A stretch of 64,000 nucleotides of DNA, taken from IMG/VR virus record IMGVR_UViG_3300044633_003049, positions 62,001 through 126,000 of that record. One strand, 5' to 3'. Below are positions 16,165 to 46,169 of this stretch, piece after piece; the stretch's first letter is position 1, and each line of letters opens with the position of its first letter. Under the pieces are notes generated by a model. It was not told where the DNA came from and made no database searches. It worked only from the letters and a program-made list of their open reading frames with translations. A program made the position numbers and the translations under genes.

Positions 16165-17613
16165 CTACTTATTATAATTTTCTTTATCCGAAATATAAAC
16201 ACCAGGTTCAAAATGTGTTATTCTACCGTCAGTAACTTTAACATCACCAATTGTATTGTCAACCACCAATGAATTATACCAATCTTCCAACTCAGGAAAT
16301 GTTGCGACAAAATTCTTATTTCTACGAATATCATATTGAACATAAAAACTCTTAAAATCGTGATATTGCATTGACATGTCCATTTCACTTGTGTTATGAC
16401 CTCTATTAACAACTTCAATGTAATCAATTAATCTTTGAATTTGAGCCCCTTCATTCATATTAATTAATGGATTTTTTTTATGTTTTCTCCACCACATTGA
16501 TAACTTACCATGTAAATCATGTTTGACGTCATCTGGTAATGTAAGTGGTGACATAAATGCTGGCCATCTTAATATGTTAAAATCTACAATTGGTTTATGT
16601 GTTCCGTATTTTTCTTTTAATTTCAACATATCATCTAAAAATTCGGTAATACTAAATAAACACAAACTATTAATTGTCATCATAATAACAACTTGTCTAA
16701 TTTTAGCACTCTCAATTACTTTAACTAAATTACTTCTCCATAGTTCATAATTTAAACCATCTCTAATATATTCTGCTTGTGCACCATAAGCCTCACAACT
16801 TGTGTATAAATCAAACTCTTTGATGTCTAATTCGTGAGATATACTAATTAACCTATTCACAGTCATTTCATTAAGACCTAGGTTAGAATTGACTGCAAGT
16901 CGTAAATTAGGGGATGGGTATTGTTTCATTGTATCCATAAACTGCCAGAAATTACGAGATTGTGATGGTTCCCCACCAGTTACACGTATTTCCATTAATT
17001 TTTGTGATAACTCAGGCCACCATTTTAAAAAGGCATCCACATATGGATTATTCTCATTGTACTTACCATAAATCTCTGACCAAGATCCGTCAGCATAATA
17101 TGCCCCCGCACTTGTTGTTTTGAATTTCTGATATGGACCGTTATCTTTTATGTCTTTACCCCATGTTGTTGAGTATCCCGAATTACAATATGAACAAGCA
17201 AAATTACAAGTTCTATCAAATGATACCTCAATAGTTTGTGGTACAATGTCCGCATCCCAAGGTAGTTCTTTTAATGCCGCAATATCTTCTGAACTATATA
17301 TTTGACTCTTATATACTCTATCTGAAATATTATTTCTACCGATATCCTCAATTTTCCAACAATAAGAACATTCAGCCGGTTTAACACCCTCTAACATCAT
17401 TTTACGAATTTCTTTTTTGAAATCAGTATTATGTAATGCCGCAGGGTTGGTTTTAATTGCTTCAACATCTATTGGATGTGGTAATGGTAGGTGACATGAA
17501 TTTGTAAACCCATGACCTAAATGTAAACTAACATTTAACCATTTTGCCGCACAAAAACTACAACTTATCTTATTTAAATGTTCATCTCTCCAATTTGACA
17601 ATTCTTCTGACAT
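16165..17613 (-). CDS. Radical SAM enzyme with N-terminal twitch-like Cys cluster
   Basis: CAAKW..SCH...CSYCW auxiliary cluster; CNFACSYC; TGGEP. Confidence 0.9.
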   Translation of the reverse strand: MSEELSNWRDEHLNKISCSFCAAKWLNVSLHLGHGFTNSCHLPLPHPIDVEAIKTNPAALHNTDFKKEIRKMMLEGVKPAECSYCWKIEDIGRNNISDRVYKSQIYSSEDIAALKELPWDADIVPQTIEVSFDRTCNFACSYCNSGYSTTWGKDIKDNGPYQKFKTTSAGAYYADGSWSEIYGKYNENNPYVDAFLKWWPELSQKLMEIRVTGGEPSQSRNFWQFMDTMKQYPSPNLRLAVNSNLGLNEMTVNRLISISHELDIKEFDLYTSCEAYGAQAEYIRDGLNYELWRSNLVKVIESAKIRQVVIMMTINSLCLFSITEFLDDMLKLKEKYGTHKPIVDFNILRWPAFMSPLTLPDDVKHDLHGKLSMWWRKHKKNPLINMNEGAQIQRLIDYIEVVNRGHNTSEMDMSMQYHDFKSFYVQYDIRRNKNFVATFPELEDWYNSLVVDNTIGDVKVTDGRITHFEPGVYISDKENYNK

Positions 17614-17661: not shown

Positions 17662-18399
17662 TTATTTAATATATTCCTTAGGTACTCTTTCTAAAAAATT
17701 TGTATTTTTAGACTCATCATAAATTATACCTAAATTATTGATATTGTTAAAATTATGAAGAAAAAGAATGTCGTTATAAAATTCTTCCTCTAATATAACA
17801 TCAGTTTCACTTTGATAAATTAATTTAGAAAAATTAATATCACTATGGTTAACTATAGTTGAAAAATGATTAACATCCACTTGACAATAATATCTAGCAT
17901 TTTCAAAATCGCATTCAGGGCTGGAACATCCTAAAAATAAACCTGGATTTTTATAATCATCAATTAAGTTACCCTCAAAACTAATTCTATTATTTTCTTC
18001 AAAATTTTTATAAACTATAATTTCATTTTCTTTTTTTATGACAGTTATAATTACCCCTTTATGGATGTCCTCTTTTTTTATGTCTTTAAATGGAATAAAA
18101 TTAAAAGATTCCTCTATTTCGGTTTTATTCCAAAACTCAAATGCCATAGTATTTGTAGTTTTATTATATGATAACCCAATATTTTTACCAGGTTTACCAT
18201 ATATCATACAAATTTCATCGGTAATAAATTCTTCTGTTATTTTAAAATCACATGTAATAATGTAATTATCATTTAATAAGAATTCATCTAATATTTTATT
18301 ATTTGTTTTGTTATATTCGGTTACATATTGATTATCATGATGGGTTGACATATCCCATTGAAACTTAACCCAATAAGGTTGTTTATAATTTATTATCAT
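17662..18399 (-). CDS. Stand-alone LamG/concanavalin-like domain protein
   Basis: Beta-rich; GKPGKNIGLSY..FEFW and LFLGC..P motifs shared with the two N-terminal repeats of 18383-21184. Confidence 0.55.
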   Translation of the reverse strand: MIINYKQPYWVKFQWDMSTHHDNQYVTEYNKTNNKILDEFLLNDNYIITCDFKITEEFITDEICMIYGKPGKNIGLSYNKTTNTMAFEFWNKTEIEESFNFIPFKDIKKEDIHKGVIITVIKKENEIIVYKNFEENNRISFEGNLIDDYKNPGLFLGCSSPECDFENARYYCQVDVNHFSTIVNHSDINFSKLIYQSETDVILEEEFYNDILFLHNFNNINNLGIIYDESKNTNFLERVPKEYIK

Positions 18400-21184
18400 T
18401 TCTTATTTGCTTTATAAAATTAATTAATTCGGGATAATACTCCTCACAATTTACTCCTCTTCTTTTTTCATATTCATCAATGAATTTAATAAAATCTCTT
18501 TTACTACTATCAAATTCTTTAATGTCAGTATCGTAATCTGTAATGAAGATGTCTTTTATTCTTGAAATTTTTTCAATCTCTTGGGTTGAAAATCCGACGT
18601 CTTCAATAGTTTGTTGTTCATAGAAATTAATACTTCTATATGTTGAATTAAATTTCATGTACTTTAACCACCTATTAAAGTACTCAACATCAATATAATC
18701 TTTCAATACTCTAAAACTCATAAATGAAGGATGTCTCAAATATGATGTATCTAAAATAACTGCCGAGTTCCAATATCTTGATGTATTGAAATGTTTAAGT
18801 TTAAAACTATGTATTTTTTTAATTAGTTTTTCGTATGAAAATATACTAAACATATTAAAAGTTGACATTACTACAATGGTTACTTTGTCCAATACCGTTA
18901 AAATTTTATCTATGTTTGAGAATAGTCTATCAAACTCCAATCCAAATCTTGTGTATTCGGCTTGTTTACCGTATCCTTCACATGATGTAAACAATATTAC
19001 CTCCTTAACTCTACCTTCAGCAATTATTTTTTCTAATTTTAAAATTAATTTATCAATCAACTCATCTGATACACCTAAATTGCTATTGATTGATAATTTT
19101 AAATTTTCGTTAGGTGTGTCAGTTTCCAATATGAAATCTAATACTTTCCATGTGTCTTTTGATAATAGAGGTTCTCCACCGGTAATTCTAAAAGTATCTA
19201 AAGTTGAATATAATTCAGGGAACCATTCCCAAAACGCTTCCACATATGGATTTTCATCTGTTTGTTTATATGGTTTAGTATTTCTTTCCTCCATCCTTCT
19301 GAGACCATTAAATTCATGTGTATCTAACATATATCCTCCGTGTTCGTTAATCTCTTCCATCCATTTGGTCGAATATTCAGGTCCACAATACGCACATTTA
19401 AAATTACATGTGTTAGAAAAATTAACTTCAACATATTTTGGGTTGTAGTTATCTCTCCAATGTAAGTTGGCAATTTCGTCAAAGTGAGGTTCAGACCATG
19501 GTTCCGCAGATTTAAAAAATCTATCAGAAAATGAATCGGAATGATCTTCTACATTCCAACAATAATTACATTCACTTGGTCTTTTGTTTTCCAACATTTC
19601 TTTCCTAGCTCTCTTCTTTACATTACTATTGTGTAATGCGGTTGGGTTTCTTTTAATTTCATCTAACCCTATTTTATGTGGTTCAGGATGGTGACAACTA
19701 TGTGTTGTTCCATTATGTAAATGCATAGTCACTTGTGTCCATTTAGCCAAACAAAAACCACAACCAACTTTATTTAATTTTTCTTTAACAAGATTAAAAT
19801 CTACCATTGTCTTAAATGTTAATAAATCAACAAGTTCGATTGATGTTTCTTTATTTAAATTGTCAAAAATTTCATCAATATTATCAGTTTTTTTAAAATT
19901 AAAATAAGTTAAAGAATTATCTGTTTTTGTTAGTTTTTCTAAATCAACAATATTCATAATTCCATCATAAATACTAAAATGATTTAATTCCATTTCAGTA
20001 AAACATTTATGATTTTCTAATAAAGAACTTGGATTATGGCAACCGAAATAAATTGATTCCGTATTGTATTCAGATATTAAATTATCTTTAACTTCAATTG
20101 TGTCAATTAATTTAAAATTATGATACAATTCGAAATATTCATTCTTTTTATAAATTAAACTAATAGTAATTCCATTATGTAAATCGTTACGATTTATTTT
20201 ATAGTTTTTGTGGCAATGAAATTCTTTATTTTCTTCATCTTTTTGTGTCCAATATTCAAAAACAAACTTCTCGACTTCATAATCAAAGCTAATACCAAAG
20301 TTTTTACCTGGTATTCCAAAAAATCCAATTTTCTCATCTTGAGTAAAATGACGTTCTATTTTAAAAATAATATTTAATGAAAAATCTCTATTTGTTAATA
20401 AATTAGATTCTAAATTGGTTTTTAATTTAAATGGTTTTTTATGTTCAATTTTTAATCCAGGTACCCTTTTTCTTTTTAATTTTATTCTATCCGCAACACT
20501 GACATTTAATTCACTAAATGAAATGTTTATTAGTTTATCTTTTTGATTTTGTATTAGAAAATAATTATAGTCTTCTTTATGAACTAAATATTTTTCCTTT
20601 AAATCAAAGTAACATAACAAATTATCATTAAGATTTTTACTATTATAAAATTTTTCAACATCTTCTATATTCGCCTCTCCATTAAAAATACTAAAATGTT
20701 TTAAATCTAATTCTGTAAAACATTTGTGTTTGTGATTATCAGCATCGGGGTTATGACAACCAAAATAAAGTGGTTGGGTATAGTAATCTTCAATTAAAGG
20801 GTCGTCTAATTCTACATCGAAAAATATATTAAAGTCATGATATAATTCTAATATATTTTTTTCTTTATCGTAATGTATAGTTAAAACAAGACCATTTTCA
20901 ACATCAATTCTATTAATATGGAAATCTTTATGGCAGTGAAAATTATCTCTACCGTTCAACCCTTTTGTCCAAAATTCAAATACAAAAGTCTCAACTTCAA
21001 AATCATAACTAATTCCAAAGTTTTTACCTGGCATACCTAAAAATCCTAATTTTTCATTATCGTAAAAATTTTCAACTTTAAATTCAATTGTTAAATAGGA
21101 ACTATCAGATAAAAACGGATTTATCTTATTACTATCAAGATTATTAATTTCAAATAACCAAGGTTTTTGATTTTCTACTTTCAT
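18383..21184 (-). CDS. Two LamG-like domains fused to a twitch-type radical SAM enzyme
   Basis: Duplicated G.PGKNFGIS.D.EVE.FVFE.WT / YFGCHNP repeats; CLAKW..SCH, CNYCW, CNFKCAYC, TGGEP; paralog of 16165-17613. Confidence 0.85.
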   Translation of the reverse strand: MKVENQKPWLFEINNLDSNKINPFLSDSSYLTIEFKVENFYDNEKLGFLGMPGKNFGISYDFEVETFVFEFWTKGLNGRDNFHCHKDFHINRIDVENGLVLTIHYDKEKNILELYHDFNIFFDVELDDPLIEDYYTQPLYFGCHNPDADNHKHKCFTELDLKHFSIFNGEANIEDVEKFYNSKNLNDNLLCYFDLKEKYLVHKEDYNYFLIQNQKDKLINISFSELNVSVADRIKLKRKRVPGLKIEHKKPFKLKTNLESNLLTNRDFSLNIIFKIERHFTQDEKIGFFGIPGKNFGISFDYEVEKFVFEYWTQKDEENKEFHCHKNYKINRNDLHNGITISLIYKKNEYFELYHNFKLIDTIEVKDNLISEYNTESIYFGCHNPSSLLENHKCFTEMELNHFSIYDGIMNIVDLEKLTKTDNSLTYFNFKKTDNIDEIFDNLNKETSIELVDLLTFKTMVDFNLVKEKLNKVGCGFCLAKWTQVTMHLHNGTTHSCHHPEPHKIGLDEIKRNPTALHNSNVKKRARKEMLENKRPSECNYCWNVEDHSDSFSDRFFKSAEPWSEPHFDEIANLHWRDNYNPKYVEVNFSNTCNFKCAYCGPEYSTKWMEEINEHGGYMLDTHEFNGLRRMEERNTKPYKQTDENPYVEAFWEWFPELYSTLDTFRITGGEPLLSKDTWKVLDFILETDTPNENLKLSINSNLGVSDELIDKLILKLEKIIAEGRVKEVILFTSCEGYGKQAEYTRFGLEFDRLFSNIDKILTVLDKVTIVVMSTFNMFSIFSYEKLIKKIHSFKLKHFNTSRYWNSAVILDTSYLRHPSFMSFRVLKDYIDVEYFNRWLKYMKFNSTYRSINFYEQQTIEDVGFSTQEIEKISRIKDIFITDYDTDIKEFDSSKRDFIKFIDEYEKRRGVNCEEYYPELINFIKQIRNDNKL

Positions 21185-22599
21185 TTCATTGTAACATTTA
21201 TAAATTTAGTATTTTCATATAAAGATACATCAATATTTTCAACATTCAAAACATTTAATATATTGTTTAATCCATCTTCATTATGTTTAATTAAACCCTG
21301 TTGCATCTCCATAACAAATCTTTTTTCGTTTCTAGCGGTAGTTTCCCCCTTAGCCCATTTTCCTTTAACATAACCCTCATCTATATGGGGTATACAGTCA
21401 AAATTACCTTCCTTTCTGAATGGAATCACATTTTCAACCACATTAATATTTTCTTTTGAAATGTTAACATTAAATTCACATTCTTCTTTATTAATATTTT
21501 CTACAACTCCCTTTTTAAAATCCATTTGTAATAACAATCCATCTGAATCATGTAACGCTTCATTGATATCATTTATTGATTTATTAAAAATTCTAATTTC
21601 CGCAATTTTACCTTTAAAAAATGTATTAACGTGTGAACAAAATCCAATTATAAATGGTTGTAGATTATTATATGGTTTTAATTTTTTCTCAATTTTAAAT
21701 GGTGTGTTTTGTTTAGTTCCGTTTTGATTATTAATTAATTCATCGTTTATATATAATGACATCTCCTTTCTTTTACTATTATATGACATTGTCACCCATG
21801 TCCATTGATTTTCATATCTTTTTGCATAGTTGTAATAGTGATTACTATCTTTATCATACATAACCATATTAACTGAACGTGAATTATTAAACGATAATCC
21901 CCAAGTCCAAGAATCTAATTTTCTTATTAATGGGTACTCAATGAATTTCTTTTCTTCGTCCCCAACAAGCCAAATCGGTACCTTTTCTGGTTGTTGTTCA
22001 GCATTAAATAATATTGATATTGTATGGTCATTATCCAAACAACTATCTAATTCTTTATTAGACGGTATAATTATAAAGTTATTTATTCCATTAAAAGTTG
22101 CCGTTGTTTTATTTTTATAAGTTTTAAAAACATTATTCGTTGTATATCCTTCTAAATAACATCTCCAAAATAAGTCATCATCTTCCTGACCCCAATCCCA
22201 ATATTCATTTGAATATCCATTGGTTTTATATGCTTGTTCTTTTGTGAATAAAACGACACCTCCAAAGTATTGATCATAACCTAACCCGTAATTATATTTT
22301 GATAACTTTGTTGCAATGTGTGTTGGATGTTCTTCAGGATACGAATAATCAGCATCTACTTGTGGTAACATATCAACATCGTGCCATGCAACATAGTCAC
22401 ATCCGTCTTCAAACGCGTAATGTGCTGCAATATTTTTCATTGCACCTCTATTGAATAACTTTTCGTCTACTTGGTGACCAACATAAAACGTATGGTCAAT
22501 TCCATTATCTGTTAAATGTTTTGATAGATGTGGTATTAATTTATCAATGTGTTCTTTTCTATCTCTATATGGTATACAAATACCTAATTTATGACTCAT
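21181..22599 (-). CDS. GT7 beta-1,4-galactosyltransferase-like enzyme with inserted LamG domain
   Basis: IPYRDR, FNRGAMKN, WHDVD, YFGGV, GYSNEYWDWGQEDDD; LamG (WTWVTMSY, LYIND, FKGKIAEIRIFN); GT7 C-terminus DGLNN...INVTM. Confidence 0.85.
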   Translation of the reverse strand: MSHKLGICIPYRDRKEHIDKLIPHLSKHLTDNGIDHTFYVGHQVDEKLFNRGAMKNIAAHYAFEDGCDYVAWHDVDMLPQVDADYSYPEEHPTHIATKLSKYNYGLGYDQYFGGVVLFTKEQAYKTNGYSNEYWDWGQEDDDLFWRCYLEGYTTNNVFKTYKNKTTATFNGINNFIIIPSNKELDSCLDNDHTISILFNAEQQPEKVPIWLVGDEEKKFIEYPLIRKLDSWTWGLSFNNSRSVNMVMYDKDSNHYYNYAKRYENQWTWVTMSYNSKRKEMSLYINDELINNQNGTKQNTPFKIEKKLKPYNNLQPFIIGFCSHVNTFFKGKIAEIRIFNKSINDINEALHDSDGLLLQMDFKKGVVENINKEECEFNVNISKENINVVENVIPFRKEGNFDCIPHIDEGYVKGKWAKGETTARNEKRFVMEMQQGLIKHNEDGLNNILNVLNVENIDVSLYENTKFINVTMK

Positions 22600-24047
22600 A
22601 TTGCTACGTTAACGTGTGTTATGTTTTCACTTATCTGAATTTTTGAATGTTCAGCAAATTCCAATGTTGATAATCCGTCATTTTCCAATAACTCGTCATT
22701 TAATCTAACTTCATTATAAAATCTTAATTGATTCCATCTGGTTGCTTTGAATTTCCATTTGTTTTTATAAAACCCATTTTCTTTGTGTGGTAATAATGCA
22801 AATGTCGATTCTCTTCTATGTGGTATTTTTATTCTTTTATATTTTTCAAATTCTAAATCAACAATTTCACAATTAAAAATTTTACCGTTATTTAAATTAT
22901 CCGATAAATCTTTTAATTTATAACCTTCAGTAAAATTAGGGTCATAATATAGTTGTAGGTCTTGTGATGATATATAATCACCAAAATTTTCCTTTAAATT
23001 ATTATTTTCATTTTTAGATATTTCTAAAATTTCATTGTCATTTAAATTACAATTGTATACTGCGAATGTTGAAATATAACCATTAAAATAATTAGGATAT
23101 TGAGAATTAGGTGTGTCATTTCTTTTTGGGTTACCTACACCTAAATAAAAATATTTTTCATTATCGTATGAACGTATTTTTTTATAAAATACTTCTTTCC
23201 CAATCAGTTTTCCGTCTTGATATACTTTAATAACGTCGTTAATGTTGTCTAACACAACACATATATTCGTTTTATAATTTGTTATTATATTTGAATTAAC
23301 ATAAACCGCATTATTGTCTTTATCAAAAGTGCAGAAATTATATCTACGAAATGAATTATACGTAATTGAAAAATCGTATCCTGGAATTGAAAATATAGTA
23401 AAATCGTCAGAGTCTTTTGTATGGTCTAATATTAAATCAGTAGGATAAAACGAAACGAAAAATGTCATATTTTGATTAAGTTTAAATTCATTTCTTGCCT
23501 TAACATATGCATTTATACCATTAAGTTTTAATACTTTTGATGGTGATGTCCCCACATTCTGAATATCTAAATCATTTAATGGTATACCTTTTTTTTCACA
23601 TCTATAAAGTAAGTCAGTGTCCTCATAACCCCAACCCCAATACTTATTGGAATACCCATCTATTTGACGAAAATGTTCCATTGGGAACATTACAACTCCT
23701 CCAAAATATTCTTCGAAGGTTAATTTTTTATCATACTCTTCATTATTTAAAAAATGTGTTGATAAATGTAACGGGACCTCTGAATATGAATAATCAACAT
23801 GTATTGGCATCATGTCAATATCATGAAATACGACATAATCACAATTTAATTCTTCAGCATACTTAAATCCGATATTTAATAATGTTCCCCTATTAAATAA
23901 TTTAGCATCGTCTTGGTTAATAACAATTAATTCATAATTGATATCAAATTTTTCCATATATCTAACAAATCGTCTACTAAATTCTTTTAAATGACTTCTT
24001 CTATTTCTATATGGAACAACGACTCCTAATTTTTTACTTTTTTCCAC
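22596..24047 (-). CDS. GT7 beta-1,4-galactosyltransferase-like enzyme with inserted LamG domain
   Basis: VPYRNR, FNRGTLLNIG, FHDID, YFGGV, GYSNKYWGWGYED; LamG (VYQDG, FNGYISTFAVYN, DLSDNLNNG); C-terminus DGLSTL...HVNVAI. Confidence 0.85.
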   Translation of the reverse strand: MEKSKKLGVVVPYRNRRSHLKEFSRRFVRYMEKFDINYELIVINQDDAKLFNRGTLLNIGFKYAEELNCDYVVFHDIDMMPIHVDYSYSEVPLHLSTHFLNNEEYDKKLTFEEYFGGVVMFPMEHFRQIDGYSNKYWGWGYEDTDLLYRCEKKGIPLNDLDIQNVGTSPSKVLKLNGINAYVKARNEFKLNQNMTFFVSFYPTDLILDHTKDSDDFTIFSIPGYDFSITYNSFRRYNFCTFDKDNNAVYVNSNIITNYKTNICVVLDNINDVIKVYQDGKLIGKEVFYKKIRSYDNEKYFYLGVGNPKRNDTPNSQYPNYFNGYISTFAVYNCNLNDNEILEISKNENNNLKENFGDYISSQDLQLYYDPNFTEGYKLKDLSDNLNNGKIFNCEIVDLEFEKYKRIKIPHRRESTFALLPHKENGFYKNKWKFKATRWNQLRFYNEVRLNDELLENDGLSTLEFAEHSKIQISENITHVNVAI

Positions 24048-24264
24048 TCTTAGTTGTTACTTTACTGTCCTCAACGAAACCTTCTTTTACAAATTTGTTA
24101 TGAAATTCCGCTAGATAATATTGGGCTCTGTTACCCCACTCATCTTTATCGATTTCTTCAAACCAAACGGTTAAAGAATCTAATGAATTTGCAATTTTTT
24201 CTAAGGCTTTTACTTTTCTTGTTTCGAGAGCCATTAACTCGTCATTTGATGGTTTTACACTCAT
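24034..24264 (-). CDS. Hypothetical protein (76 aa)
   Basis: Overlapping, translationally coupled ORF within the operon. Confidence 0.6.
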   Translation of the reverse strand: MSVKPSNDELMALETRKVKALEKIANSLDSLTVWFEEIDKDEWGNRAQYYLAEFHNKFVKEGFVEDSKVTTKSGKK

Positions 24265-25118
24265 ATTGATGTTATTTTATTTATTAATTTATTCCAACTT
24301 TTATATCTGTTATATTCGGGATATATTAATCCCAATTCAAACATATATTCTCTTTTATTTAGATTTATTTTATATTTTGTTTTTAACAATTCAGTGAACA
24401 TTTTAAAATACTCATCTGAATAAGAATAATCTTCTTTTAATTCTGCAACCGCTTTCACTCTATCTATGGAAGTTTTATCCCATTTAAAATGATGTACTTG
24501 AACTGAATAGGATGGTATTGGTGCAATTGATGGATGACCCCAACCTTGCCATTTCCATGTGGTGTGTCCATCAATATTTGCATAGTGTTGACCTGAAGTA
24601 ATTTGTATTCCACCTCTAATTAAACATATTTTATTTGGACACGCTTTACTCATATGATATCTAAAAAAACCGGCATTTGGAAATTGTTCCCATATTGATA
24701 CATCATCTTTTAATTCAACAAACTCACCATCTTCTCCAATTCTATCAATAAAACCACCTCGAACAATATCCCATCCAAATTCTTCACAATCGTTAATTAA
24801 TGAAACAATATCATCATCAGGATATAAATGAAATTCATCAATGTCGGCAATCACCCACCAATCAAATGGTATTTGATCCTTAATGAAGTTATATAATGCG
24901 GTTACTTTCTCCCAATCAAAAACTCTATCTTCAATGACCTTAACAATCTTCACATTGTCATGGTCTTTAATAATTTCATTTATATCTTCTTCTAATGTTG
25001 GGTATAAATCTGTTTTATAAATTGCAATGTTAATCTCATCAACATATCTTTTATAATGTTTGATGAAATGTGGAAGTAAATTAACTCCGTGACCTATAAC
25101 TGTTAATAACCTAACCAT
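24261..25118 (-). CDS. GT2-like/GT92-like glycosyltransferase (GT-A fold)
   Basis: LLPHFIKHY, WWVIADIDEF (DxD), HHFKW. Confidence 0.75.
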   Translation of the reverse strand: MVRLLTVIGHGVNLLPHFIKHYKRYVDEINIAIYKTDLYPTLEEDINEIIKDHDNVKIVKVIEDRVFDWEKVTALYNFIKDQIPFDWWVIADIDEFHLYPDDDIVSLINDCEEFGWDIVRGGFIDRIGEDGEFVELKDDVSIWEQFPNAGFFRYHMSKACPNKICLIRGGIQITSGQHYANIDGHTTWKWQGWGHPSIAPIPSYSVQVHHFKWDKTSIDRVKAVAELKEDYSYSDEYFKMFTELLKTKYKINLNKREYMFELGLIYPEYNRYKSWNKLINKITSI

Positions 25119-25843
25119 TATTTTTTATTAATTACCGTTATACCGCTTGATGCTGGTTTGTTAGGTAATATACGAAAATTAAATAAATTAATCAAATTAT
25201 AAAGTGGATTTTTTTCTAATTCTTTAATAAATTTTGATGGACCGTCAAATCTATGGTGGTCTTTTTTTGCGTCCTCTGAAACTATTAATGATTCCTCGTA
25301 ATCTGAATCTGTATCGTGAATAACAATAATACCTTTATCGGTTAATAGTGTTGAATATAATTCAAAATCTTTCTTAACTCCTTCATATGAATGGTCACCA
25401 TCTATAAAGATAAAATCTAATTTAATATCTTGTAAAACAAAGAAATTATAATATGCATCTTCTGATGTTGATTTAATCAATCTGGGTTGAAACGTATGTC
25501 GGTAGTATGAATACTCATCCTCAAGGTCGTTAGGTCCTCCTACCCCATTACAAGCGTCAACCAGATAGGTTACACCAATATCACCCCAATTTAAAGTGTC
25601 GTTACCTTCAAATATTCCTTGTTTATGTAAATCTAATCTTGCTTGTGTTATAATACGAGGTATATATCCACCACCAGAACCGATACATGCGCAGTTCTTG
25701 GCTCTCATATGTTGTATTAACGAATAAACTATAATACCATCACCTAAATGTTCTTCGGTGGCACCATGTGTCCATCTATAAGGTACAGGTTCACCATAAT
25801 TGGTTGTAATTTTTTCTTTAATAAAATCTTGATTGGTAATCAT
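25118..25843 (-). CDS. Class I SAM-dependent methyltransferase (Methyltransf_24-like)
   Basis: IGSGGG, DFIFIDGDHSYEGVKKDF, GIIVIHDT. Confidence 0.85.
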   Translation of the reverse strand: MITNQDFIKEKITTNYGEPVPYRWTHGATEEHLGDGIIVYSLIQHMRAKNCACIGSGGGYIPRIITQARLDLHKQGIFEGNDTLNWGDIGVTYLVDACNGVGGPNDLEDEYSYYRHTFQPRLIKSTSEDAYYNFFVLQDIKLDFIFIDGDHSYEGVKKDFELYSTLLTDKGIIVIHDTDSDYEESLIVSEDAKKDHHRFDGPSKFIKELEKNPLYNLINLFNFRILPNKPASSGITVINKK

Positions 25844-26568: not shown

Positions 26569-28230
26569 TTATCTAATATAGACTTCCACTCTTGCACTTC
26601 TATTGATACCGGTAGTATCTTGACAACACCCAATCATATCTCCACCAGAATAGTTTCCATATCTACTATCCATACCAATACCACCACTTACATCATCCGA
26701 ACCTCTATATGGTCCTACTGCCAAAGTAGCTGGAGATGTGTATAATCCTTCACCATTTTCATTCCAACCAAACCCCCATCTAACTTTTGCATCCGTTGTA
26801 CCAAAATATAATGGGTTATTTCTAAAATTAAATCCATAAAATCTAATATCCACCTGACTTGAAAATACTCCACTTGCCCAACCAGTAAAAGTTTTTGCAT
26901 CTCTTAAAAAATATCCACCATAAGTACCACCATCACCACTTTCGTATGTTCCTGCATTAGTAAAAAAATCTACTAAATTTGTTCGCGTACTAGCTCTACC
27001 ACCATTAAACCCTTTTTCCATCCATATCCAATTTCCTGTTCCCGCAATACTACCACCAGTAGTTGGAATATCGGGCCATCTAGCCATTAAATCTGTACCT
27101 TCAAAATAATTGAATGCGTCATATTTAGCATCACCATCATCTTGATTTAAGTTATTTTGATTTAATACATTTTGTGTTGTCCAATAACTTGCCCCATAAT
27201 TAAAAGTAGTTCCTCTTGTGGCTTTCATTACCATCATCCAACCTCCTCCATCATATGCACTATCCATAATACAAAATGTTTTTCTTGGGCCAATGTTAGG
27301 TAAATTTATATAATATACCCCATTTGGTGCATTTGAATTTAAGGTTTTTATTGTTTGTGCCGAATCGGCCGGATTAAATGCTGAACCTAATGGTGTATCT
27401 ACTCCGTATCTACCTCTTTGTTCATTAAATATATTTCCAATTTCTTCATCACTTAATGCTCGGTTATAAATCATAACTGCTCCTAAATAACCAATAAGTA
27501 ATTCTCCCGTATTACCTTCACCAAATCTCAATGTTTCAGTATTTGTAGTTGAACTAACGGCACCTGTTACATATGCACATCGTATTGTATCAATAAATGT
27601 TGCTTTTGATGACCCGTCACTTCTAATGACAACTTGTTGCCACTTACTTCCTATTATTGAATTATTGGGTGTATCTATCGCTGCCAATGAGTAATTTGTT
27701 TCATAATGAATATATCCGAATGCACTTCTCAATGTTGCGGCGTATTGTTGTGAATCTCCTTTACTAATTAATCCGTGCCAAGTTCCACCACCTAATGATG
27801 GATTTACCCAAATTAACGCAGTATATTGTTGGGTACTCGTAAAATCCAATGAACTATGATGTGCAACGTTTGCTCTTGCGGTTCCATCAAAATATAAAGA
27901 ACCTCCTCCGGTCGTATTAAATGAAACACCTGAACCAGGTAGAGTTAAATTATTTGAATTTCCTGATAAATCTGTTAATGTACTACCATTACCACTATAA
28001 CATTGTGGATCACCAGCATCTATATAACAAACTAAACCAGATGTGCTATAATTTTCTTTTCTTTTTTGTGCGCTCATCCACTTAGTACCATCATACACTT
28101 CAACTTCGGTACGACTTGAATTATATCGTATCATACCAGTTGTTGGTGATGGTCTTTGTGTTCCAGTTCCCGATGGTAGTCCTAAATATCCGGTAGAACT
28201 TGTTATTGTTGTATTTTTAAGTGTTGCCAT
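26569..28230 (-). CDS. Fibre tip/adhesin: anchor domain + LamG + fibrinogen C-terminal-like domain
   Basis: LPSGT..QRP..G.IRYN..E.YDG.W anchor; LamG (DLSGNSN, IYNRALS); GVYYI..FC.MD..DGGGW fibrinogen-like motif. Confidence 0.75.
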   Translation of the reverse strand: MATLKNTTITSSTGYLGLPSGTGTQRPSPTTGMIRYNSSRTEVEVYDGTKWMSAQKRKENYSTSGLVCYIDAGDPQCYSGNGSTLTDLSGNSNNLTLPGSGVSFNTTGGGSLYFDGTARANVAHHSSLDFTSTQQYTALIWVNPSLGGGTWHGLISKGDSQQYAATLRSAFGYIHYETNYSLAAIDTPNNSIIGSKWQQVVIRSDGSSKATFIDTIRCAYVTGAVSSTTNTETLRFGEGNTGELLIGYLGAVMIYNRALSDEEIGNIFNEQRGRYGVDTPLGSAFNPADSAQTIKTLNSNAPNGVYYINLPNIGPRKTFCIMDSAYDGGGWMMVMKATRGTTFNYGASYWTTQNVLNQNNLNQDDGDAKYDAFNYFEGTDLMARWPDIPTTGGSIAGTGNWIWMEKGFNGGRASTRTNLVDFFTNAGTYESGDGGTYGGYFLRDAKTFTGWASGVFSSQVDIRFYGFNFRNNPLYFGTTDAKVRWGFGWNENGEGLYTSPATLAVGPYRGSDDVSGGIGMDSRYGNYSGGDMIGCCQDTTGINRSARVEVYIR

Positions 28231-28236
28231 AATTTT

Positions 28237-28944
28237 TTATTTTATCCATAATTGAACATGTGAAAGATAATGTGCTTCATCTGCTTGTGCCTGATCTGCT
28301 CCACATACATGTCTTGCTGTAAATGATGTTGATGTGTGGTCATAATATCCACTATCAAATATCACATATCCATCATTTCCATAAGTACCATTTCCCCAAG
28401 GTCTATAAGTGTATGTTTTTGGATTACTCCAAGTTGCGGACGCCCCTGATTGTAAAACTGATGTTGATGGTGCGGCATTATAAATTTTTGTAAATCTCCA
28501 AAATTCAGTTTCTGTTCCTGATGAATTCATTAAATATAAATTACTTGTTTCGGTATCCAATGAGTCCACTAAATGCCAAAATACCATATAACGAACTTGT
28601 GTATGTGTTGGAATTGAACTCAATGTTAATGTATATGTTGCAGGACCTGTCGACCAACCATGTGCGGTGACATGTCCTAATTCGCCAAAGTTTAACATTG
28701 AGAATGTTGTACTATTATTCCAATTTCCTGTATATAAATTCGCATCTCTACCTTCGTAATAATGTAAATAACTTTCCGTTCTAGCATAAGGATTTAACCA
28801 ATTATTAATATAAACTTCAGGTCTACCTAAAGTAGTATTATATCTAACATATCCATTAGACGGAGATGGTCTTTCAGCTGTACTACCTGTTGGTAATCCA
28901 ATAAATCCAGTGTCGTTAATTGTTAAATTTTTTAAACTTGCCAT
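28237..28944 (-). CDS. Fibre tip/adhesin with shared anchor and unknown beta-rich head
   Basis: MASLKNLTINDTGFIGLPTGSTAERP..GYVRYN anchor. Confidence 0.65.
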   Translation of the reverse strand: MASLKNLTINDTGFIGLPTGSTAERPSPSNGYVRYNTTLGRPEVYINNWLNPYARTESYLHYYEGRDANLYTGNWNNSTTFSMLNFGELGHVTAHGWSTGPATYTLTLSSIPTHTQVRYMVFWHLVDSLDTETSNLYLMNSSGTETEFWRFTKIYNAAPSTSVLQSGASATWSNPKTYTYRPWGNGTYGNDGYVIFDSGYYDHTSTSFTARHVCGADQAQADEAHYLSHVQLWIK

Positions 28945-28949
28945 TATAT

Positions 28950-29813
28950 TTAAATATTAAATCTATTTCTTTGCGCGTTATAATTTTGTAAAACTTGAGC
29001 TCCACTTAATCCTATACTATATATTCTTGCAATTGCAATTTGTCCTTGAAAATTATGCAACCCATCTGTCAATCCACTTCCATATGTTCCAACTACATAT
29101 GTGGCGGCGGCAATTGTCCCTGTCTGTGCCGCAGACCATACTTCGGTACCATTCACATATGCTTTACTCGTTGAACCATCCCATGTACCTACAATGTGTG
29201 ACCAAACATTATTGGGGATATTACCAACTGCACTATATGGTCTACTACTATCGGTAGTATTTGCCCAATGTAAAGAGTGTGTACTACCACCATCTGCGGA
29301 ATTAAATATACCTAAATATGTCGTATTTGTTGCAGAAACCACACCACCTCTCACAGTTCCCGTACTTACTGTTCTTGTTGGTTTAATCCAACCTTCCATA
29401 GTTATTTGTGTTGTTGGTAATGTATTTAATGTAGAAATTCTAATATAATCATTAGTTCCGTCAAATGAAACGGTACCTCCCGAACCATCAGCTGGTGTAT
29501 ATGTTGGACTGTTTACAAATATCCCATGTGCACATTGTGAACTAACATCATACCACACATTACCACCGCGATAACTCGTTGGTTTACCACTATCTAAATG
29601 AAGTAATAAGTTTGATGTTACAATACCACCTTCCGCAATTCTACCGGTTGTTTGATCTATCCAATAACTACCGTTGTAATATTCAACTAAACCCATAGTT
29701 GTATTAAATCTAACATATCCAGTCAATGGTGACACAGGTCTTTGTGCTGTTGTTCCCGATGGTAATTGTATATAACCAGTGTCGTTTATGGTAAGATTTG
29801 TAAGATTTGACAT
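28950..29813 (-). CDS. Fibre tip/adhesin: anchor + LamG domain
   Basis: LPSGTTAQRP..GYVRFN anchor; LLLHLD, FDGTNDY, WSHIVGTWDG, YVNG, QNYNAQRNRF. Confidence 0.75.
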   Translation of the reverse strand: MSNLTNLTINDTGYIQLPSGTTAQRPVSPLTGYVRFNTTMGLVEYYNGSYWIDQTTGRIAEGGIVTSNLLLHLDSGKPTSYRGGNVWYDVSSQCAHGIFVNSPTYTPADGSGGTVSFDGTNDYIRISTLNTLPTTQITMEGWIKPTRTVSTGTVRGGVVSATNTTYLGIFNSADGGSTHSLHWANTTDSSRPYSAVGNIPNNVWSHIVGTWDGSTSKAYVNGTEVWSAAQTGTIAAATYVVGTYGSGLTDGLHNFQGQIAIARIYSIGLSGAQVLQNYNAQRNRFNI

Positions 29814-30999: not shown

Positions 31000-31469
31000 T
31001 ATACGTATCTTGTTAAAATTGGTGACGTTATTGCGTTAGCATTTGGAGCAAATAATGTTATATTAACTAAACATGTGGCATTTCCCCACGATACGTTATA
31101 TTGATTTGTAAATCTTAACCAACTTTTACTACCATCACTTGGGTCTTGGTAATATGAGAATGTTATTAGTTGGTCGTTAGTTGGTCCTGATGTAATTTGT
31201 AAACCATATTGTGATAATGCAAACCAAACATTTTGAGTACCGTTATAACTTTGATATGATAAAAAACTAATATAACCTGTTACCCATTGCCAATTACTAT
31301 TATTACAAAGAACATCTGTATATGGTGTGGCGGTATAATATGGTGATATTACAGAAACATTTCCACCCCATTGTTGTAAAGCCATTGGATTAGAACAAAT
31401 TGTACTACTTGCATTTGACGTAGATGTTGCATTGTATGTTGTTGCAGTTGTACCTATTAATGTCGCCAT
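30999..31469 (-). CDS. Small beta-rich fibre-tip paralog
   Basis: MATL start; LSQYGL, WLRFTN, WGN, SPILTRYV. Confidence 0.6.
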   Translation of the reverse strand: MATLIGTTATTYNATSTSNASSTICSNPMALQQWGGNVSVISPYYTATPYTDVLCNNSNWQWVTGYISFLSYQSYNGTQNVWFALSQYGLQITSGPTNDQLITFSYYQDPSDGSKSWLRFTNQYNVSWGNATCLVNITLFAPNANAITSPILTRYV

Positions 31470-35305: not shown

Positions 35306-35326
35306 ATATATGTGTTCTAAATCCTT

Positions 35327-35361
35327 GTGATATATATCACGGTTAACGACCTATGTAGGTC
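35327..35361. promoter_or_regulatory. Three adjacent palindromes in the leader of the fibre gene
   Basis: GTGATATATATCAC (35327-35340), GTTAAC (35342-35347), GACCTA-TG-TAGGTC (35348-35361). Confidence 0.45.
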
Positions 35362-35365
35362 TTAT

Positions 35366-35373
35366 TATAAATA
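35366..35373 (-). promoter_or_regulatory. TATTTATA putative phage promoter
   Basis: Recurrent motif upstream of starts; here directly after a terminator. Confidence 0.55.
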
Positions 35374-35385
35374 CATTTAATAAAT

Positions 35386-35414
35386 AAAAAAGGAGACTTT
35401 TTTACGGTCTCCTT
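35386..35414 (-). terminator. Intrinsic terminator
   Basis: AAGGAGAC-9nt-GTCTCCTT stem followed by a T-run on the minus strand. Confidence 0.8.
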
Positions 35415-35432
35415 GAATGTTTTTATTTATTG

Positions 35433-37373: not shown

Positions 37374-37380
37374 TATGTTA

Positions 37381-37388
37381 TATAAATA
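37381..37388 (-). promoter_or_regulatory. TATTTATA putative phage promoter
   Basis: 7 nt upstream of ATG 37373. Confidence 0.55.
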
Positions 37389-37398
37389 CTTTTATTTT

Positions 37399-39093: not shown

Positions 39094-39099
39094 ATAAAC

Positions 39100-39107
39100 T
39101 ATAAATA
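39100..39107 (-). promoter_or_regulatory. TATTTATA putative phage promoter
   Basis: 6 nt upstream of ATG 39093, downstream of a terminator. Confidence 0.55.
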
Positions 39108-39128
39108 TATTATATTGTCTTTATGGAT

Positions 39129-39158
39129 AAAAAAAGGAGGACTTTTTGAGTCCTCCTT
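39129..39158 (-). terminator. Intrinsic terminator
   Basis: AAGGAGGACT-loop-AGTCCTCCTT followed by a T-run on the minus strand. Confidence 0.85.
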
Positions 39159-39177
39159 GTTAATTTTTATTCTACTT

Positions 39178-43560: not shown

Positions 43561-43581
43561 CTACTTTGTGTTTGTTTTGTT

Positions 43582-43589
43582 TATAAATA
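43582..43589 (-). promoter_or_regulatory. TATTTATA putative phage promoter
   Basis: 21 nt upstream of ATG 43560. Confidence 0.5.
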
Positions 43590-43661
43590 GTGTATTTTAC
43601 TACATCCACCGAATTATTTCTATTGTTTTTTAATATATTTTTATTATTAATTTGTTTTTTT

Positions 43662-46163: not shown

Positions 46164-46169
46164 TTCTTA

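What the first reader, a model, noticed from the sequence alone, without database searches (positions are those of the whole stretch)
21181..24047. Two GT7 galactosyltransferases with a LamG domain inserted inside the catalytic fold
Seen: in both paralogs the GT7 sequence runs to W.WG.ED.D..R, is interrupted by ~230 aa of LamG-type sequence, then resumes with the GT7 His region and the DGL...V.V C-terminus. Known: in beta4GalT these segments are contiguous, near the acceptor site and mobile loop. Inference: a built-in glycan-binding or scaffolding module makes the enzyme processive on repetitive acceptors, analogous to the lectin domain of ppGalNAc-Ts. The tandem pair may act as a heterodimer.
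Basis: partly seen in the sequence, partly recalled or inferred. Interest (0 to 1): 0.72.

Follow-up and report, generated by a model that had tools for sequence, protein, structure and literature searches.

The report
Phage galactosyltransferases with nested LamG domain
Two neighbouring genes of an uncultured freshwater jumbo phage encode beta-1,4-galactosyltransferase-like enzymes whose catalytic fold is split by a complete LamG beta-sandwich; the design is real, is conserved in hundreds of related phages, and I found no description of it in the literature searched, but what these enzymes glycosylate is unknown.

Summary
Genes A (21181-22599, 472 aa) and B (22596-24047, 483 aa), both on the minus strand, each contain a GT7 (beta4GalT-type) GT-A domain. 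It is interrupted after the WGxEDD helix by a LamG jelly roll of about 235-245 aa, and it resumes with the metal-binding His strand and the DGL C-terminus.

- **Structure:** AlphaFold models (pLDDT 93-94, pTM 0.88-0.91) superpose on beta4GalT1 at Z 27-28, using both flanks. The insert matches LamG and pentraxin domains at Z 16-22.
- **Insertion site:** a profile of uninserted 220-aa relatives hits both proteins in two pieces. The break is the same in about 50 divergent family representatives and corresponds to bovine beta4GalT1 S331-R334, 10-13 residues before M344/H347.
- **Distribution:** the family occurs almost only in tailed-phage contigs (at least 513 IMG/VR contigs, up to 335 kb).
- **Paralogs:** A and B are ancient paralogs in a fixed order. 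Both keep every catalytic residue.
- **Context:** they sit in a conserved module of methyltransferase, GT-A, B, A and N-twitch radical-SAM enzymes. The radical-SAM enzymes carry a homologous LamG domain, either fused or encoded as a separate gene.

My reading is that these are soluble sequential hexosyltransferases and that LamG is a shared acceptor-docking module.

The parts
22596..24047 (-). Gene B: GT7-LamG transferase, 483 aa, GTG start
   Evidence: ORF. Pfam 7N+7C+Laminin_G_3. AF2 model pLDDT 94.4, pTM 0.91. beta4GalT1 Z 27.5. B clade 64/64 in the tree.
23571..24047 (-). B, GT7 N-terminal part (residues 1-159): DxD (HDID), YFGG, WGYEDTD
   Evidence: Profile of uninserted relatives, positions 2-153, on residues 4-159. 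Catalytic residues 100% conserved in the B clade.
22839..23570 (-). B, nested LamG beta-sandwich (residues about 160-403)
   Evidence: Laminin_G_3 E 7.6e-9. Model residues 168-402 match the PAPP-A LG domain and 4dqa at Z about 22.
22599..22838 (-). B, GT7 C-terminal part (residues 404-483): R..F..LPH metal-His strand and the DGL end
   Evidence: Profile 147-218 on residues 404-482. The structural alignment runs to residue 483.
21181..22599 (-). Gene A: GT7-LamG transferase, 472 aa. Its start overlaps B's stop (ATGA) and its stop overlaps the start of the radical-SAM gene.
   Evidence: AF2 model pLDDT 92.7, pTM 0.88. beta4GalT1 Z 27.9. A clade 65/65, support 1.0.
22129..22599 (-). A, GT7 N-terminal part (residues 1-157): HDVD, YFGG, WGQEDDD
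   Evidence: phmmer to beta4GalT7, E 1e-30, over residues 3-174. Profile 1-157 on residues 1-160.
21424..22128 (-). A, nested LamG beta-sandwich (residues about 158-392)
   Evidence: Laminin_G_3 E 8.4e-9. Model residues 160-390 match PAPP-A, 4dqa and pentraxins at Z 16-20. DSSP is almost all strand.
21184..21423 (-). A, GT7 C-terminal part (residues 393-472): P393, R395, C402 (equivalent to M344), H405 (equivalent to H347), DGL
   Evidence: Profile 148-199 on residues 390-448. Mapping to bovine numbering through. Conservation.
25118..25843 (-). Methyltransf_24 class I methyltransferase, part of the conserved module
   Evidence: Pfam E 7e-12. Homolog present in 69 of 79 related loci.
24261..25118 (-). 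285-aa protein with a weak GT2-like (GT-A) signal, part of the conserved module
   Evidence: Glyco_tranf_2_4 E 0.0011, below the cut-off. Homolog in 72 of 79 loci.
24034..24264 (-). Small ORF (76 aa) between the 285-aa gene and B. ORFs of 62-99 aa lie at the same position in related loci.
   Evidence: Read from the sequence. Small genes at this position in L004 and L005 and in L028, L072 and L065.
18383..21184 (-). 933-aa N-twitch radical-SAM enzyme with two N-terminal LamG-like domains
   Evidence: NF033640 E 3.9e-91 on residues 477-923. N-terminal repeats. hhalign to the GT7 LamG insert, probability 98%, E 2.9e-13.
17662..18399 (-). 245-aa stand-alone LamG-like protein
   Evidence: BLASTP to both N-terminal repeats of the 933-aa protein. 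hhalign.
16165..17613 (-). Second N-twitch radical-SAM enzyme (482 aa), without LamG
   Evidence: NF033640 E 8.1e-89. Homolog in 76 of 79 loci.

Best explanation
A and B are two soluble, cytoplasmic, metal-dependent inverting hexosyltransferases of the GT7 (beta4GalT) fold. A complete LamG jelly roll has been inserted into the surface turn between the helix that follows the catalytic WGxEDD motif and the strand that carries the metal-binding His. This point corresponds to bovine beta4GalT1 S331-R334.

The insertion happened once, in the ancestor of a phage-restricted family. The gene then duplicated, and both copies stayed catalytically competent in a fixed B-A order.

They act as consecutive steps of a phage-encoded glycan-building module: methyltransferase, GT-A-like protein, B, A, and N-twitch radical-SAM enzymes. 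A variable set of nucleotide-sugar tailoring genes lies next to it. By analogy with Tyr289 of beta4GalT1, the donor is probably a UDP-hexose such as UDP-Gal rather than a UDP-HexNAc.

The LamG domain is a built-in acceptor-recognition or docking module that the transferases share with the radical-SAM enzymes of the same module. It holds the enzymes on a common acceptor, most plausibly a phage structural protein or its growing glycan. Less plausibly the acceptor is a host envelope glycan.

Shown: the architecture, the insertion point, conservation, paralogy, module membership, and the homology of LamG between enzyme classes. Inferred: donor, acceptor, the role of LamG, and the sequential action.
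For: **Architecture and insertion point**
- Pfam domains.
- Two-piece profile hits with the same break in about 50 representatives at 50% clustering.
- Uninserted relatives align without a break to beta4GalT1, E 4e-61.
- AF2 models pLDDT 92.7 and 94.4, pTM 0.88 and 0.91.
- beta4GalT1 and beta4GalT7 at Z 25-28 using both flanks; LamG and pentraxins at Z 16-22 for the insert.

**Catalytic competence**
- D74/D76, Y111-FGG, W136, E139, D140 and H405 are 100% conserved in both the A clade (65 sequences) and the B clade (64 sequences).

**Soluble proteins**
- No hydrophobic segment in A or B, and no polytopic membrane protein in the glycan island.

**Ancient fixed paralogs**
- Position in the tandem equals clade: A 65/65 with support 1.0, B 64/64 with support 0.995.
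- Two or three tandem copies in 77 of 81 loci, mostly with a 4-nt overlap.

**Module**
- The methyltransferase, the 285-aa protein, B, A and the radical-SAM genes are present in 52-79 of 79 loci.
- The radical-SAM enzymes belong to NF033640.
- Neighbouring genes include a UDP-glucose dehydrogenase-like protein, an epimerase and a carbamoyltransferase.

**LamG shared between enzyme classes**
- hhalign of the radical-SAM N-domain against the GT7 insert: probability 98%, E 2.9e-13.
- The radical-SAM enzyme occurs with 0, 1 or 2 fused LamG domains. When it has none, a stand-alone LamG ORF of about 200 aa follows it in the loci inspected.

**Phage-restricted**
- At least 513 IMG/VR contigs.
- ESM Atlas clusters with this architecture are 100% viral, Uroviricota.
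- Only three full-length hits in 185,579 species genomes, all on MAG contigs.
Against: - No biochemical or ligand evidence exists. The donor and the acceptor are inferred only.
- The LamG insert has no invariant polar residues that would mark a ligand site. It is the least conserved part of the protein: 0.56 against 0.60-0.79 for the GT7 parts. That also fits a purely structural or oligomerisation role.
- I could not measure where LamG sits relative to the active site, because the model coordinates are not exposed.
- Adjacency to tail-fibre genes is seen in the window and in several of the loci inspected, but not all (L072 and L041, for example, have unassigned genes upstream).
- The genome record is only about 63% complete. 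The absence of a flippase, a polymerase or an initiating transferase is therefore weak evidence.
- Transcription is not shown. Only a few short contigs from RNA libraries match.
Confidence: 0.55

Rival explanations
1. A and B form an obligate heterodimer, possibly through their LamG domains, and work as one bifunctional or processive polymerase on a repetitive acceptor.
For: - The B-A order is strictly conserved, with overlapping stop and start codons in most loci. This suggests coupled, equimolar expression.
- The two clades have been co-retained since before the lineage diversified.
- GT7-containing chondroitin synthases are bifunctional polymerases (established knowledge).
Against: - The complex prediction gave no verdict, which counts neither for nor against.
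- Both copies keep all catalytic residues, so neither is a scaffold subunit.
- Gene overlap extends beyond the pair. A's stop overlaps the radical-SAM gene's start by 4 nt, and that gene's end overlaps the next ORF by 17 nt, so overlap is not specific to A and B.
Confidence: 0.2
2. The module glycosylates phage DNA (hypermodified bases) to evade restriction. LamG has no role in glycan recognition.
For: - Phage GT-A enzymes that build glycans on 5hmC DNA are known (10.1101/2023.12.21.572611).
- The moraphage paper discusses DNA glucosylation for the core glycosyltransferases of freshwater jumbo phages (PMC12619734).
Against: - No thymidylate-synthase-like hydroxymethylase or TET/JBP domain was found in the 212 kb available. 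This is weak evidence: the record is incomplete, and the TET control rang nowhere.
- The module lies beside the tail-fibre cluster and among nucleotide-sugar tailoring, O-methyl and carbamoyl transferases typical of polysaccharide or protein glycans.
- In this genome, LamG domains otherwise occur in proteins matching virion-structural families.
Confidence: 0.1
3. LamG is a passive passenger or an oligomerisation and stability domain with no role in substrate choice. The enzymes modify host envelope glycans (O-antigen or capsule precursors) during infection, as proposed for the LPS gene clusters of other large phages.
For: - The insert is the least conserved region and lacks invariant polar residues.
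- The N and C termini of the LamG fold are adjacent (established knowledge of the fold), so it is easily tolerated in loops.
- Bacteria encode uninserted GT7-like enzymes.
Against: - The same LamG type recurs on a different enzyme class of the module, fused or split. That is hard to explain for a passive passenger.
- No polytopic membrane protein, such as a flippase, polymerase or initiating transferase, lies in the island.
- The insert has been retained in every one of about 170 family members examined, across sequences only about 30% identical.
Confidence: 0.15

Closest known systems
Beta-1,4-galactosyltransferase 7 and 1 (CAZy GT7; PDB 3lw6, 4irp, 1tvy, 1fgx)
   Same: - Same GT-A fold: Z 25-28, about 30% identity over 205-217 aligned residues.
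- Same DxD, Tyr-FGG, WGxEDD and metal-binding His positions.
- Sequence match E 1e-30.
   Different: - The fold is interrupted by a LamG domain of 235-245 aa at the position of bovine S331-R334.
- There is no signal anchor or stem, and about 45 N-terminal residues of the eukaryotic catalytic domain are missing (chain alignment starts at 176-178).
- Cys (A) or Leu (B) replaces the metal ligand Met344.
- The proteins are phage-encoded and cytoplasmic.
Uninserted prokaryotic and viral GT7-like proteins of about 220 aa (e.g. P0243, P0266; bacterial copies in Steroidobacter and Vibrio; giant-virus GT7)
   Same: They share the catalytic core, 32-38% identical to A. They also lack the eukaryotic stem and the N-terminal extension.
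   Different: They have no LamG. The turn 'GL...R.G.Y..LPH' is continuous.
Polypeptide GalNAc-transferases (GT27: GT-A plus a ricin-type lectin domain)
   Same: A GT-A catalytic domain, whose Pfam signature includes Glyco_transf_7C, is combined with a built-in non-catalytic beta-rich domain that directs the enzyme to acceptors (established knowledge).
   Different: The lectin is a beta-trefoil appended at the C-terminus through a flexible linker. It is not a LamG nested inside the fold. The models here predict a fixed inter-domain arrangement (pTM 0.88-0.91). No glycan binding is shown here.
Lactose synthase (beta4GalT1 plus alpha-lactalbumin; PDB 1nf5, 4l41)
   Same: A non-catalytic protein module associated with a GT7 core re-defines acceptor specificity, next to the mobile loop that follows His347 (established knowledge). 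The insertion here lies 10-13 residues before that hinge.
   Different: Alpha-lactalbumin is a separate lysozyme-fold protein. Here the module is covalently nested and has the LamG fold. Its contact with the acceptor site was not measured.
LamG / pentraxin-like domains (PAPP-A LG domain, BACOVA_03559, PTX3; Pfam PF13385)
   Same: Jelly-roll beta-sandwich: Z 16-22 over 180-200 residues. Pfam match above the gathering score.
   Different: Only 9-17% identity. No conserved Ca2+ or ligand residues were identified. The domain is used here as an insert in enzymes, not as an extracellular or virion domain.

Membership tests
CAZy GT7 / beta4GalT-type GT-A transferases | Sequence signatures Glyco_transf_7N and Glyco_transf_7C above the curated cut-offs | tested here: met
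   A scores 56.5 and 68.5 bits; B scores 68.2 and 70.5 bits. The cut-offs are 27 and 23.
CAZy GT7 / beta4GalT-type GT-A transferases | Complete GT-A fold superposable on solved beta4GalT structures, including the C-terminal His strand and the last helix and strands | tested here: met
   On AF2 models: Z 27.9 (A) and 27.5 (B), 215-217 residues aligned, model residues 1 to the end against chain 176-399. These are predicted structures, not experimental ones.
CAZy GT7 / beta4GalT-type GT-A transferases | DxD metal/nucleotide motif (bovine D252-x-D254) | tested here: met
   HDVD in A and HDID in B. D74 and D76 are 100% conserved in both clades.
CAZy GT7 / beta4GalT-type GT-A transferases | WGxEDD motif with W314, E317 and the catalytic base D318 | tested here: met
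   W136, E139 and D140 are 100% conserved in the A and B clades. They are lost in the third paralog C.
CAZy GT7 / beta4GalT-type GT-A transferases | Metal-binding His (H347) downstream of the WGxEDD helix | tested here: met
   H405 (A) and H421 (B) align to the invariant His of the uninserted profile and to bovine H347. The position is 100% conserved. The Met344 position is Cys in A and Leu in B.
CAZy GT7 / beta4GalT-type GT-A transferases | Inverting beta-1,4 transfer from a UDP-sugar | not testable with these tools
   Needs an enzyme assay. The Tyr at the Y289 position (Y111, 100% conserved) suggests a hexose donor only by analogy.
Eukaryotic Golgi beta4GalTs (subgroup of GT7) | Type II membrane anchor, stem region and luminal disulfides | tested here: not met
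   The proteins start 4-6 residues before the first beta-strand. No hydrophobic segment was found. I therefore do not file them as orthologues of any eukaryotic beta4GalT.
LamG / ConA-like lectin superfamily (PF13385) | Profile match above cut-off and a jelly-roll beta-sandwich fold | tested here: met
   36.2 and 36.3 bits against a cut-off of 27.6. Z 16-22 to the PAPP-A LG domain, 4dqa and pentraxins.
LamG / ConA-like lectin superfamily (PF13385) | Ligand-binding (Ca2+, glycan or protein) site on the sandwich rim | tested here: inconclusive
   Only F169, G171, G319 and G330 are (near-)invariant within the insert. No coordinates were available to map the surfaces.
Lectin-assisted transferases of the ppGalNAc-T type | C-terminal ricin-type beta-trefoil lectin on a flexible linker | tested here: not met
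   The accessory domain is a LamG nested in the fold. The resemblance is functional analogy only.

The most novel reading that the evidence does not exclude
The LamG-bearing enzymes are the conserved core of a self-contained, cytoplasmic protein-glycosylation system of freshwater jumbo phages. This core comprises two GT7 transferases with nested LamG, N-twitch radical-SAM enzymes with fused or stand-alone LamG, a methyltransferase and a further GT-A. In this reading, LamG is a common adaptor that docks each enzyme onto the phage's own fibre or virion proteins, so that a phage-specified, chemically unusual glycan is built directly on the virion. That would be a bacterial-virus counterpart of the autonomous glycosylation machineries of chloroviruses and mimiviruses.
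Probability: 0.25. Interest if true: 0.8.

Novelty: new variant of a known kind. Interest (0 to 1): 0.58.

Why it matters
GT7 enzymes are textbook eukaryotic Golgi transferases. Here the same catalytic machinery is a core gene pair of a large, uncultured lineage of aquatic jumbo phages.

Its fold tolerates a whole 240-residue domain, inserted ten residues before the hinge that controls the open and closed states of beta4GalT. If LamG sets the acceptor specificity, this is a natural built-in specifier. That would be a covalent counterpart of alpha-lactalbumin or of the ppGalNAc-T lectin, and a template for engineering acceptor-targeted galactosyltransferases.

The same LamG also travels with radical-SAM enzymes, fused or split. 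This gives a concrete, testable handle on what a conserved and completely uncharacterised phage glycan module acts on.

Pfam-style annotation shows these proteins as '7N-7C-LamG' with an unassigned tail. The nested architecture is therefore invisible in current databases.

Tried and rejected
- **Heterodimer prediction of A and B:** no verdict (score 0.00, folded without alignments). This is neither support nor evidence against.
- **tblastn of A and of an uninserted relative against 50,697 GenBank phage records:** no match, so no cultured phage carries the family. blastn found only a chance 119-nt AT-rich match to Campylobacter phages.
- **Single-protein scan of species genomes:** nothing. The alignment-based rescan found only three full-length copies, all on MAG contigs.
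- **phmmer of the C-terminal 87 residues or of the insert alone against PDB:** nothing significant. The link of the C-terminal segment to GT7 needed the profile of uninserted relatives and the fold comparison.
- **PHROGs and NCBIfam for A and B:** no family.
- **Literature searches for the domain combination and for phage twitch radical-SAM plus glycosyltransferase:** nothing relevant.
- **Link to 'moraphages' (PMC12619734):** considered, because both are freshwater jumbo phages with several core glycosyltransferases. It is not established. No DnaK was found, and I could not compare the genomes.
- **Terminase_6C search in the record:** no hit. The record is about 63% complete.
- **Metatranscriptome contigs:** a handful of 151-nt pieces, too sparse to claim expression.
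- **An apparent similarity of A residues 166-174 to the beta4GalT7 'TFSHIH' strand:** rejected as the true continuation. The profile and the structure both place the His strand at residues 399-405.
- **Rooting of the family tree with uninserted relatives:** unresolved (support 0.44-0.66). A single insertion event is argued from the identical insertion site, not from the tree.

Full report
**1. What is there**

The window is bases 62001-126000 of a 211,784-bp IMG/VR virus record, estimated about 63% complete. The same sequence is held by many lake-water and freshwater metagenome runs.

The record encodes a DnaB-like helicase, a ribonucleotide reductase and a B-family DNA polymerase. The polymerase is only 23-25% identical to any polymerase in GenBank phages. 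The record also encodes several very large collagen-like tail-fibre proteins. Related contigs reach 300-335 kb. This is therefore an uncultured aquatic jumbo phage.

The finding covers two minus-strand genes:
- B: 22596-24047, 483 aa, GTG start.
- A: 21181-22599, 472 aa.

B's stop and A's start overlap as ATGA. A's stop overlaps the start of the next gene. A and B are 29% identical along their whole length.

**2.

*Sequence evidence.*
- Pfam finds Glyco_transf_7N, Glyco_transf_7C and Laminin_G_3 above the curated cut-offs in both proteins. The 7C match ends prematurely at profile position 64-67 of 78.
- phmmer against PDB sequences gives beta4GalT7 and beta4GalT1 at E 1e-30 to 1e-26, but only over residues about 3-174.
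- An exhaustive representative search found, besides about 58 representatives of 440-510 aa (about 50 of them with the split architecture), many relatives of 215-260 aa that have no insert.
- A profile of 11 of these uninserted proteins hits A as positions 1-157 on residues 1-160, plus positions 148-199 on residues 390-448.
- The same profile hits B as positions 2-153 on residues 4-159, plus positions 147-218 on residues 404-482.
- The break falls at profile position about 150-153 in about 50 representatives that are only 25-45% identical to one another.
- The uninserted profile aligns without interruption to bovine and human beta4GalT1, E 4e-61.

*Insertion point.* The PDB sequences can be numbered using the residues named in the PDB titles (Met344His, Cys342Thr, W314A). 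On that numbering the insertion point corresponds to bovine S331-R334. This is 10-13 residues before the metal ligands M344 and H347.

The equivalences for A are:

| A residue | Bovine beta4GalT1 |
|---|---|
| D74 / D76 | D252 / D254 |
| Y111 | Y289 |
| W136 | W314 |
| E139 / D140 | E317 / D318 |
| R395 | R334 |
| C402 | M344 |
| H405 | H347 |

*Structure evidence.*
- AlphaFold2 with 61-sequence alignments gave confident models: A at pLDDT 92.7 and pTM 0.88, B at pLDDT 94.4 and pTM 0.91.
- Against the PDB, beta4GalT1 (1tvy) scores Z 27.9 for A and 27.5 for B. It aligns 215-217 residues at rmsd 1.9-2.3, spanning model residue 1 to the last residue against chain residues 176/178 to 398/399. The C-terminal 80 residues therefore complete the GT-A fold.
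- Residues about 160-390 of A and 168-402 of B match the LamG-like domain of PAPP-A, the putative carbohydrate-binding protein BACOVA_03559 and pentraxins at Z 16-22.

**3. Distribution and evolution**

- The family is large: 1,662 clusters at 90% identity with E below 0.001 for A.
- At least 513 IMG/VR viral contigs encode it.
- ESM Atlas holds at least five clusters with the same three Pfam families and the same fold (TM 0.75-0.86 for four of them, 0.57 for the fifth). All are labelled 100% viral, Uroviricota.
- AlphaFold DB has a single fold cluster of this architecture: A0A2E0BNI5, auto-named 'Galactosyltransferase C-terminal domain-containing protein', TM 0.88.
- BFVD has none. Giant-virus GT7 proteins match only the N-terminal part, and phage LamG structural proteins match only the insert.
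- Among one genome for each of 185,579 prokaryote species, only three full-length copies appear. All are on MAG contigs (Flavobacteriaceae, Pelagibacterales, Spirochaetales). Genuine bacterial hits, such as Steroidobacter and Vibrio, are uninserted.
- No GenBank phage has the family.

In 81 related loci, 64 carry two tandem split genes, 13 carry three and 4 carry one. Most of the pairs overlap by 4 nt or abut.

In a maximum-likelihood tree, position in the tandem equals clade: A 65/65 with support 1.0, B 64/64 with support 0.995, and the extra upstream copy C 11/11 with support 0.95.

A and B keep D74, D76, Y111, F112, W136, E139, D140 and H405 at 100%. Copy C has lost W136, E139, D140 and H405, so it is probably a pseudo-enzyme.

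Within each clade the LamG insert is less conserved than the catalytic parts: 0.56 against 0.60-0.79. Its only (near-)invariant positions are F169, G171, G319 and G330.

**4. Context**

A block of five or six genes recurs across the lineage:

| Gene | Window coordinates | Loci with a homolog (of 79) |
|---|---|---|
| Methyltransf_24 methyltransferase | 25118-25843 | 69 |
| 285-aa protein, weak GT2-like signal | 24261-25118 | 72 |
| Small ORF | 24034-24264 | seen in several loci, not counted |
| B | 22596-24047 | 79 |
| A | 21181-22599 | 79 |
| Radical-SAM enzyme | 18383-21184 | 52 |
| Second radical-SAM enzyme | 16165-17613 | 76 |

Both radical-SAM proteins belong to NCBIfam NF033640, 'twitch domain-containing radical SAM protein' (E 1e-89 to 1e-91).

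In the window and several related loci, variable LamG-bearing or fibre-like proteins lie on the high-coordinate side of the block (transcriptionally upstream). Variable nucleotide-sugar genes lie on the other side: a UDP-glucose dehydrogenase-like protein, an epimerase/dehydratase and, further on, a carbamoyltransferase.

No ORF of the island has more than one strongly hydrophobic segment. There is thus no obvious flippase, polymerase or polyprenyl-phosphate transferase. The genome is incomplete, so this is weak evidence.

**5. A new clue to the role of LamG**

- The 933-aa radical-SAM protein has two N-terminal repeats. The repeats also make up the neighbouring 245-aa ORF (17662-18399).
- Pfam does not recognise them, even at E 10.
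- A profile-profile comparison with the GT7 inserts gives probability 98%, E 2.9e-13, over 140 columns.
- In other phages the orthologous radical-SAM enzyme has one such domain (about 700 aa) or none (about 460 aa). In the loci inspected, when it has none, a stand-alone LamG ORF of about 200 aa follows it directly.

A related LamG module is therefore nested in two transferases, fused to a radical-SAM enzyme, or encoded separately next to it. This is a Rosetta-stone pattern. It argues that LamG works with the enzymes of this module as a common accessory, not as a device peculiar to galactosyl transfer.

**6. Most likely mechanism**

*Shown:* two catalytically intact, soluble GT7 enzymes with a rigidly packed nested LamG. 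They are always together and always in the same module.

*Inferred:*
- They add two successive hexoses, with a UDP-hexose donor by analogy with Tyr289, to an acceptor that the radical-SAM and methyl-transfer enzymes further tailor.
- LamG docks each enzyme on that common acceptor.
- The acceptor is most plausibly a phage structural protein or its glycan. The reasons are the cytoplasmic soluble enzymes, the lack of export genes, the position beside the fibre genes, and the many LamG-bearing virion-type proteins in the genome.

I put about 0.55 on this overall reading and 0.95 on the architecture itself.

Rivals are an obligate A/B heterodimer or polymerase (0.2), host-envelope modification with a passive LamG (0.15) and DNA glycosylation (0.1). 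Neither a thymidylate-synthase-like hydroxymethylase nor a TET domain was found, but the record is incomplete and the TET control rang nowhere.

**7. Comparison with what is known**

The catalytic core passes every sequence and fold test for GT7. It lacks the membrane anchor, the stem and the first 45 or so residues of eukaryotic beta4GalTs. Its nearest relatives are uninserted GT7-like proteins of about 220 aa found in public genomes and metagenomes, some of them bacterial.

Two functional analogies apply: the ppGalNAc-T lectin domain and the beta4GalT1/alpha-lactalbumin pair. Both are analogies only, and the defining features of those systems are not met.

I found no paper that describes this domain combination. 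A 2025 paper on freshwater 'moraphages' notes four core glycosyltransferase groups without resolving their architecture (PMC12619734). Whether this phage belongs to that lineage is open.

**8. Verdict**

The feature is real and strongly conserved, and I found no prior description of it. It is a new variant of a known enzyme kind: a GT7 with a nested LamG. Its mechanistic guesses remain untested. The shared-LamG observation suggests a more specific and testable hypothesis.

Noticed in passing
L065:6818-8266, L067:6757-8214, L073:6771-8249 and 10 further loci (third, upstream tandem copy): Thirteen related phages carry a third GT7-LamG paralog (clade C). It has lost W136, E139, D140 and H405 but keeps the LamG insert. 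It is probably a pseudo-glycosyltransferase retained for binding or scaffolding.
   Followed up: partly
window 18383-21184, 17662-18399, 16165-17613 (minus strand): Two N-twitch radical-SAM enzymes (NF033640) lie here. One has two N-terminal LamG-like domains that Pfam does not recognise, and next to it is a stand-alone copy of that domain. In other phages the fusion is split into separate genes. The chemistry of this radical-SAM subfamily is unknown to me.
   Followed up: partly
window 24034-24264 (minus strand): A 76-aa ORF lies between the 285-aa gene and B and overlaps B's GTG start by 14 nt. ORFs of 62-99 aa sit at the same place in L004, L005, L028, L065 and L072. Its function is unknown.
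   Followed up: no
window 1-26500 versus 26500-50000: The glycan-gene island has 23-31% G+C, while the adjoining fibre-gene region has 33-40%. This may reflect the Gly-rich collagen-like fibre genes rather than foreign origin. I did not analyse it.
   Followed up: no
window 31469-49916 (minus strand): Four very large ORFs (1278, 1460, 833 and 1248 aa) show many collagen-like and tail-fibre PHROG matches. Two proteins (646 and 564 aa) lie among them, the 564-aa one carrying LamG, and further LamG-bearing 'virion structural' type proteins lie just downstream at 26569-29813.
   Followed up: no
G000:C1:26608-27204 (+), outside the window (L003): A 198-aa ORF has a weak partial Glyco_transf_7C / GT7-like match (E 6e-6 and 2e-5). 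It lies in a second, plus-strand cluster of small genes and is possibly a degenerate or distant GT-A.
   Followed up: no
G000:C1:50629-52296 (L008:10629-12296, minus strand): A Nol/NodU-like carbamoyltransferase (PHROG E 2e-117) lies upstream of the window. It suggests that the phage glycan is carbamoylated.
   Followed up: no
whole record G000; L094 (248-kb contig in a Flavobacteriaceae MAG), L095 (Pelagibacterales MAG): IMG/VR labels the 212-kb record 'provirus'. Near relatives sit on long contigs binned into Flavobacteriaceae and Pelagibacterales MAGs. These are either host hints or binning artefacts.
   Followed up: no
window 23306-23615 and 22139-22215: A few short contigs (151-222 nt) from two freshwater metatranscriptome libraries match genes B and A at 91-99% identity. 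This is too sparse to show transcription, and DNA carry-over cannot be excluded.
   Followed up: partly
window 59643-61010 (minus strand): This is the only polytopic membrane protein candidate in the 212-kb record (455 aa, about 5 hydrophobic segments). It has no PHROG match.
   Followed up: no
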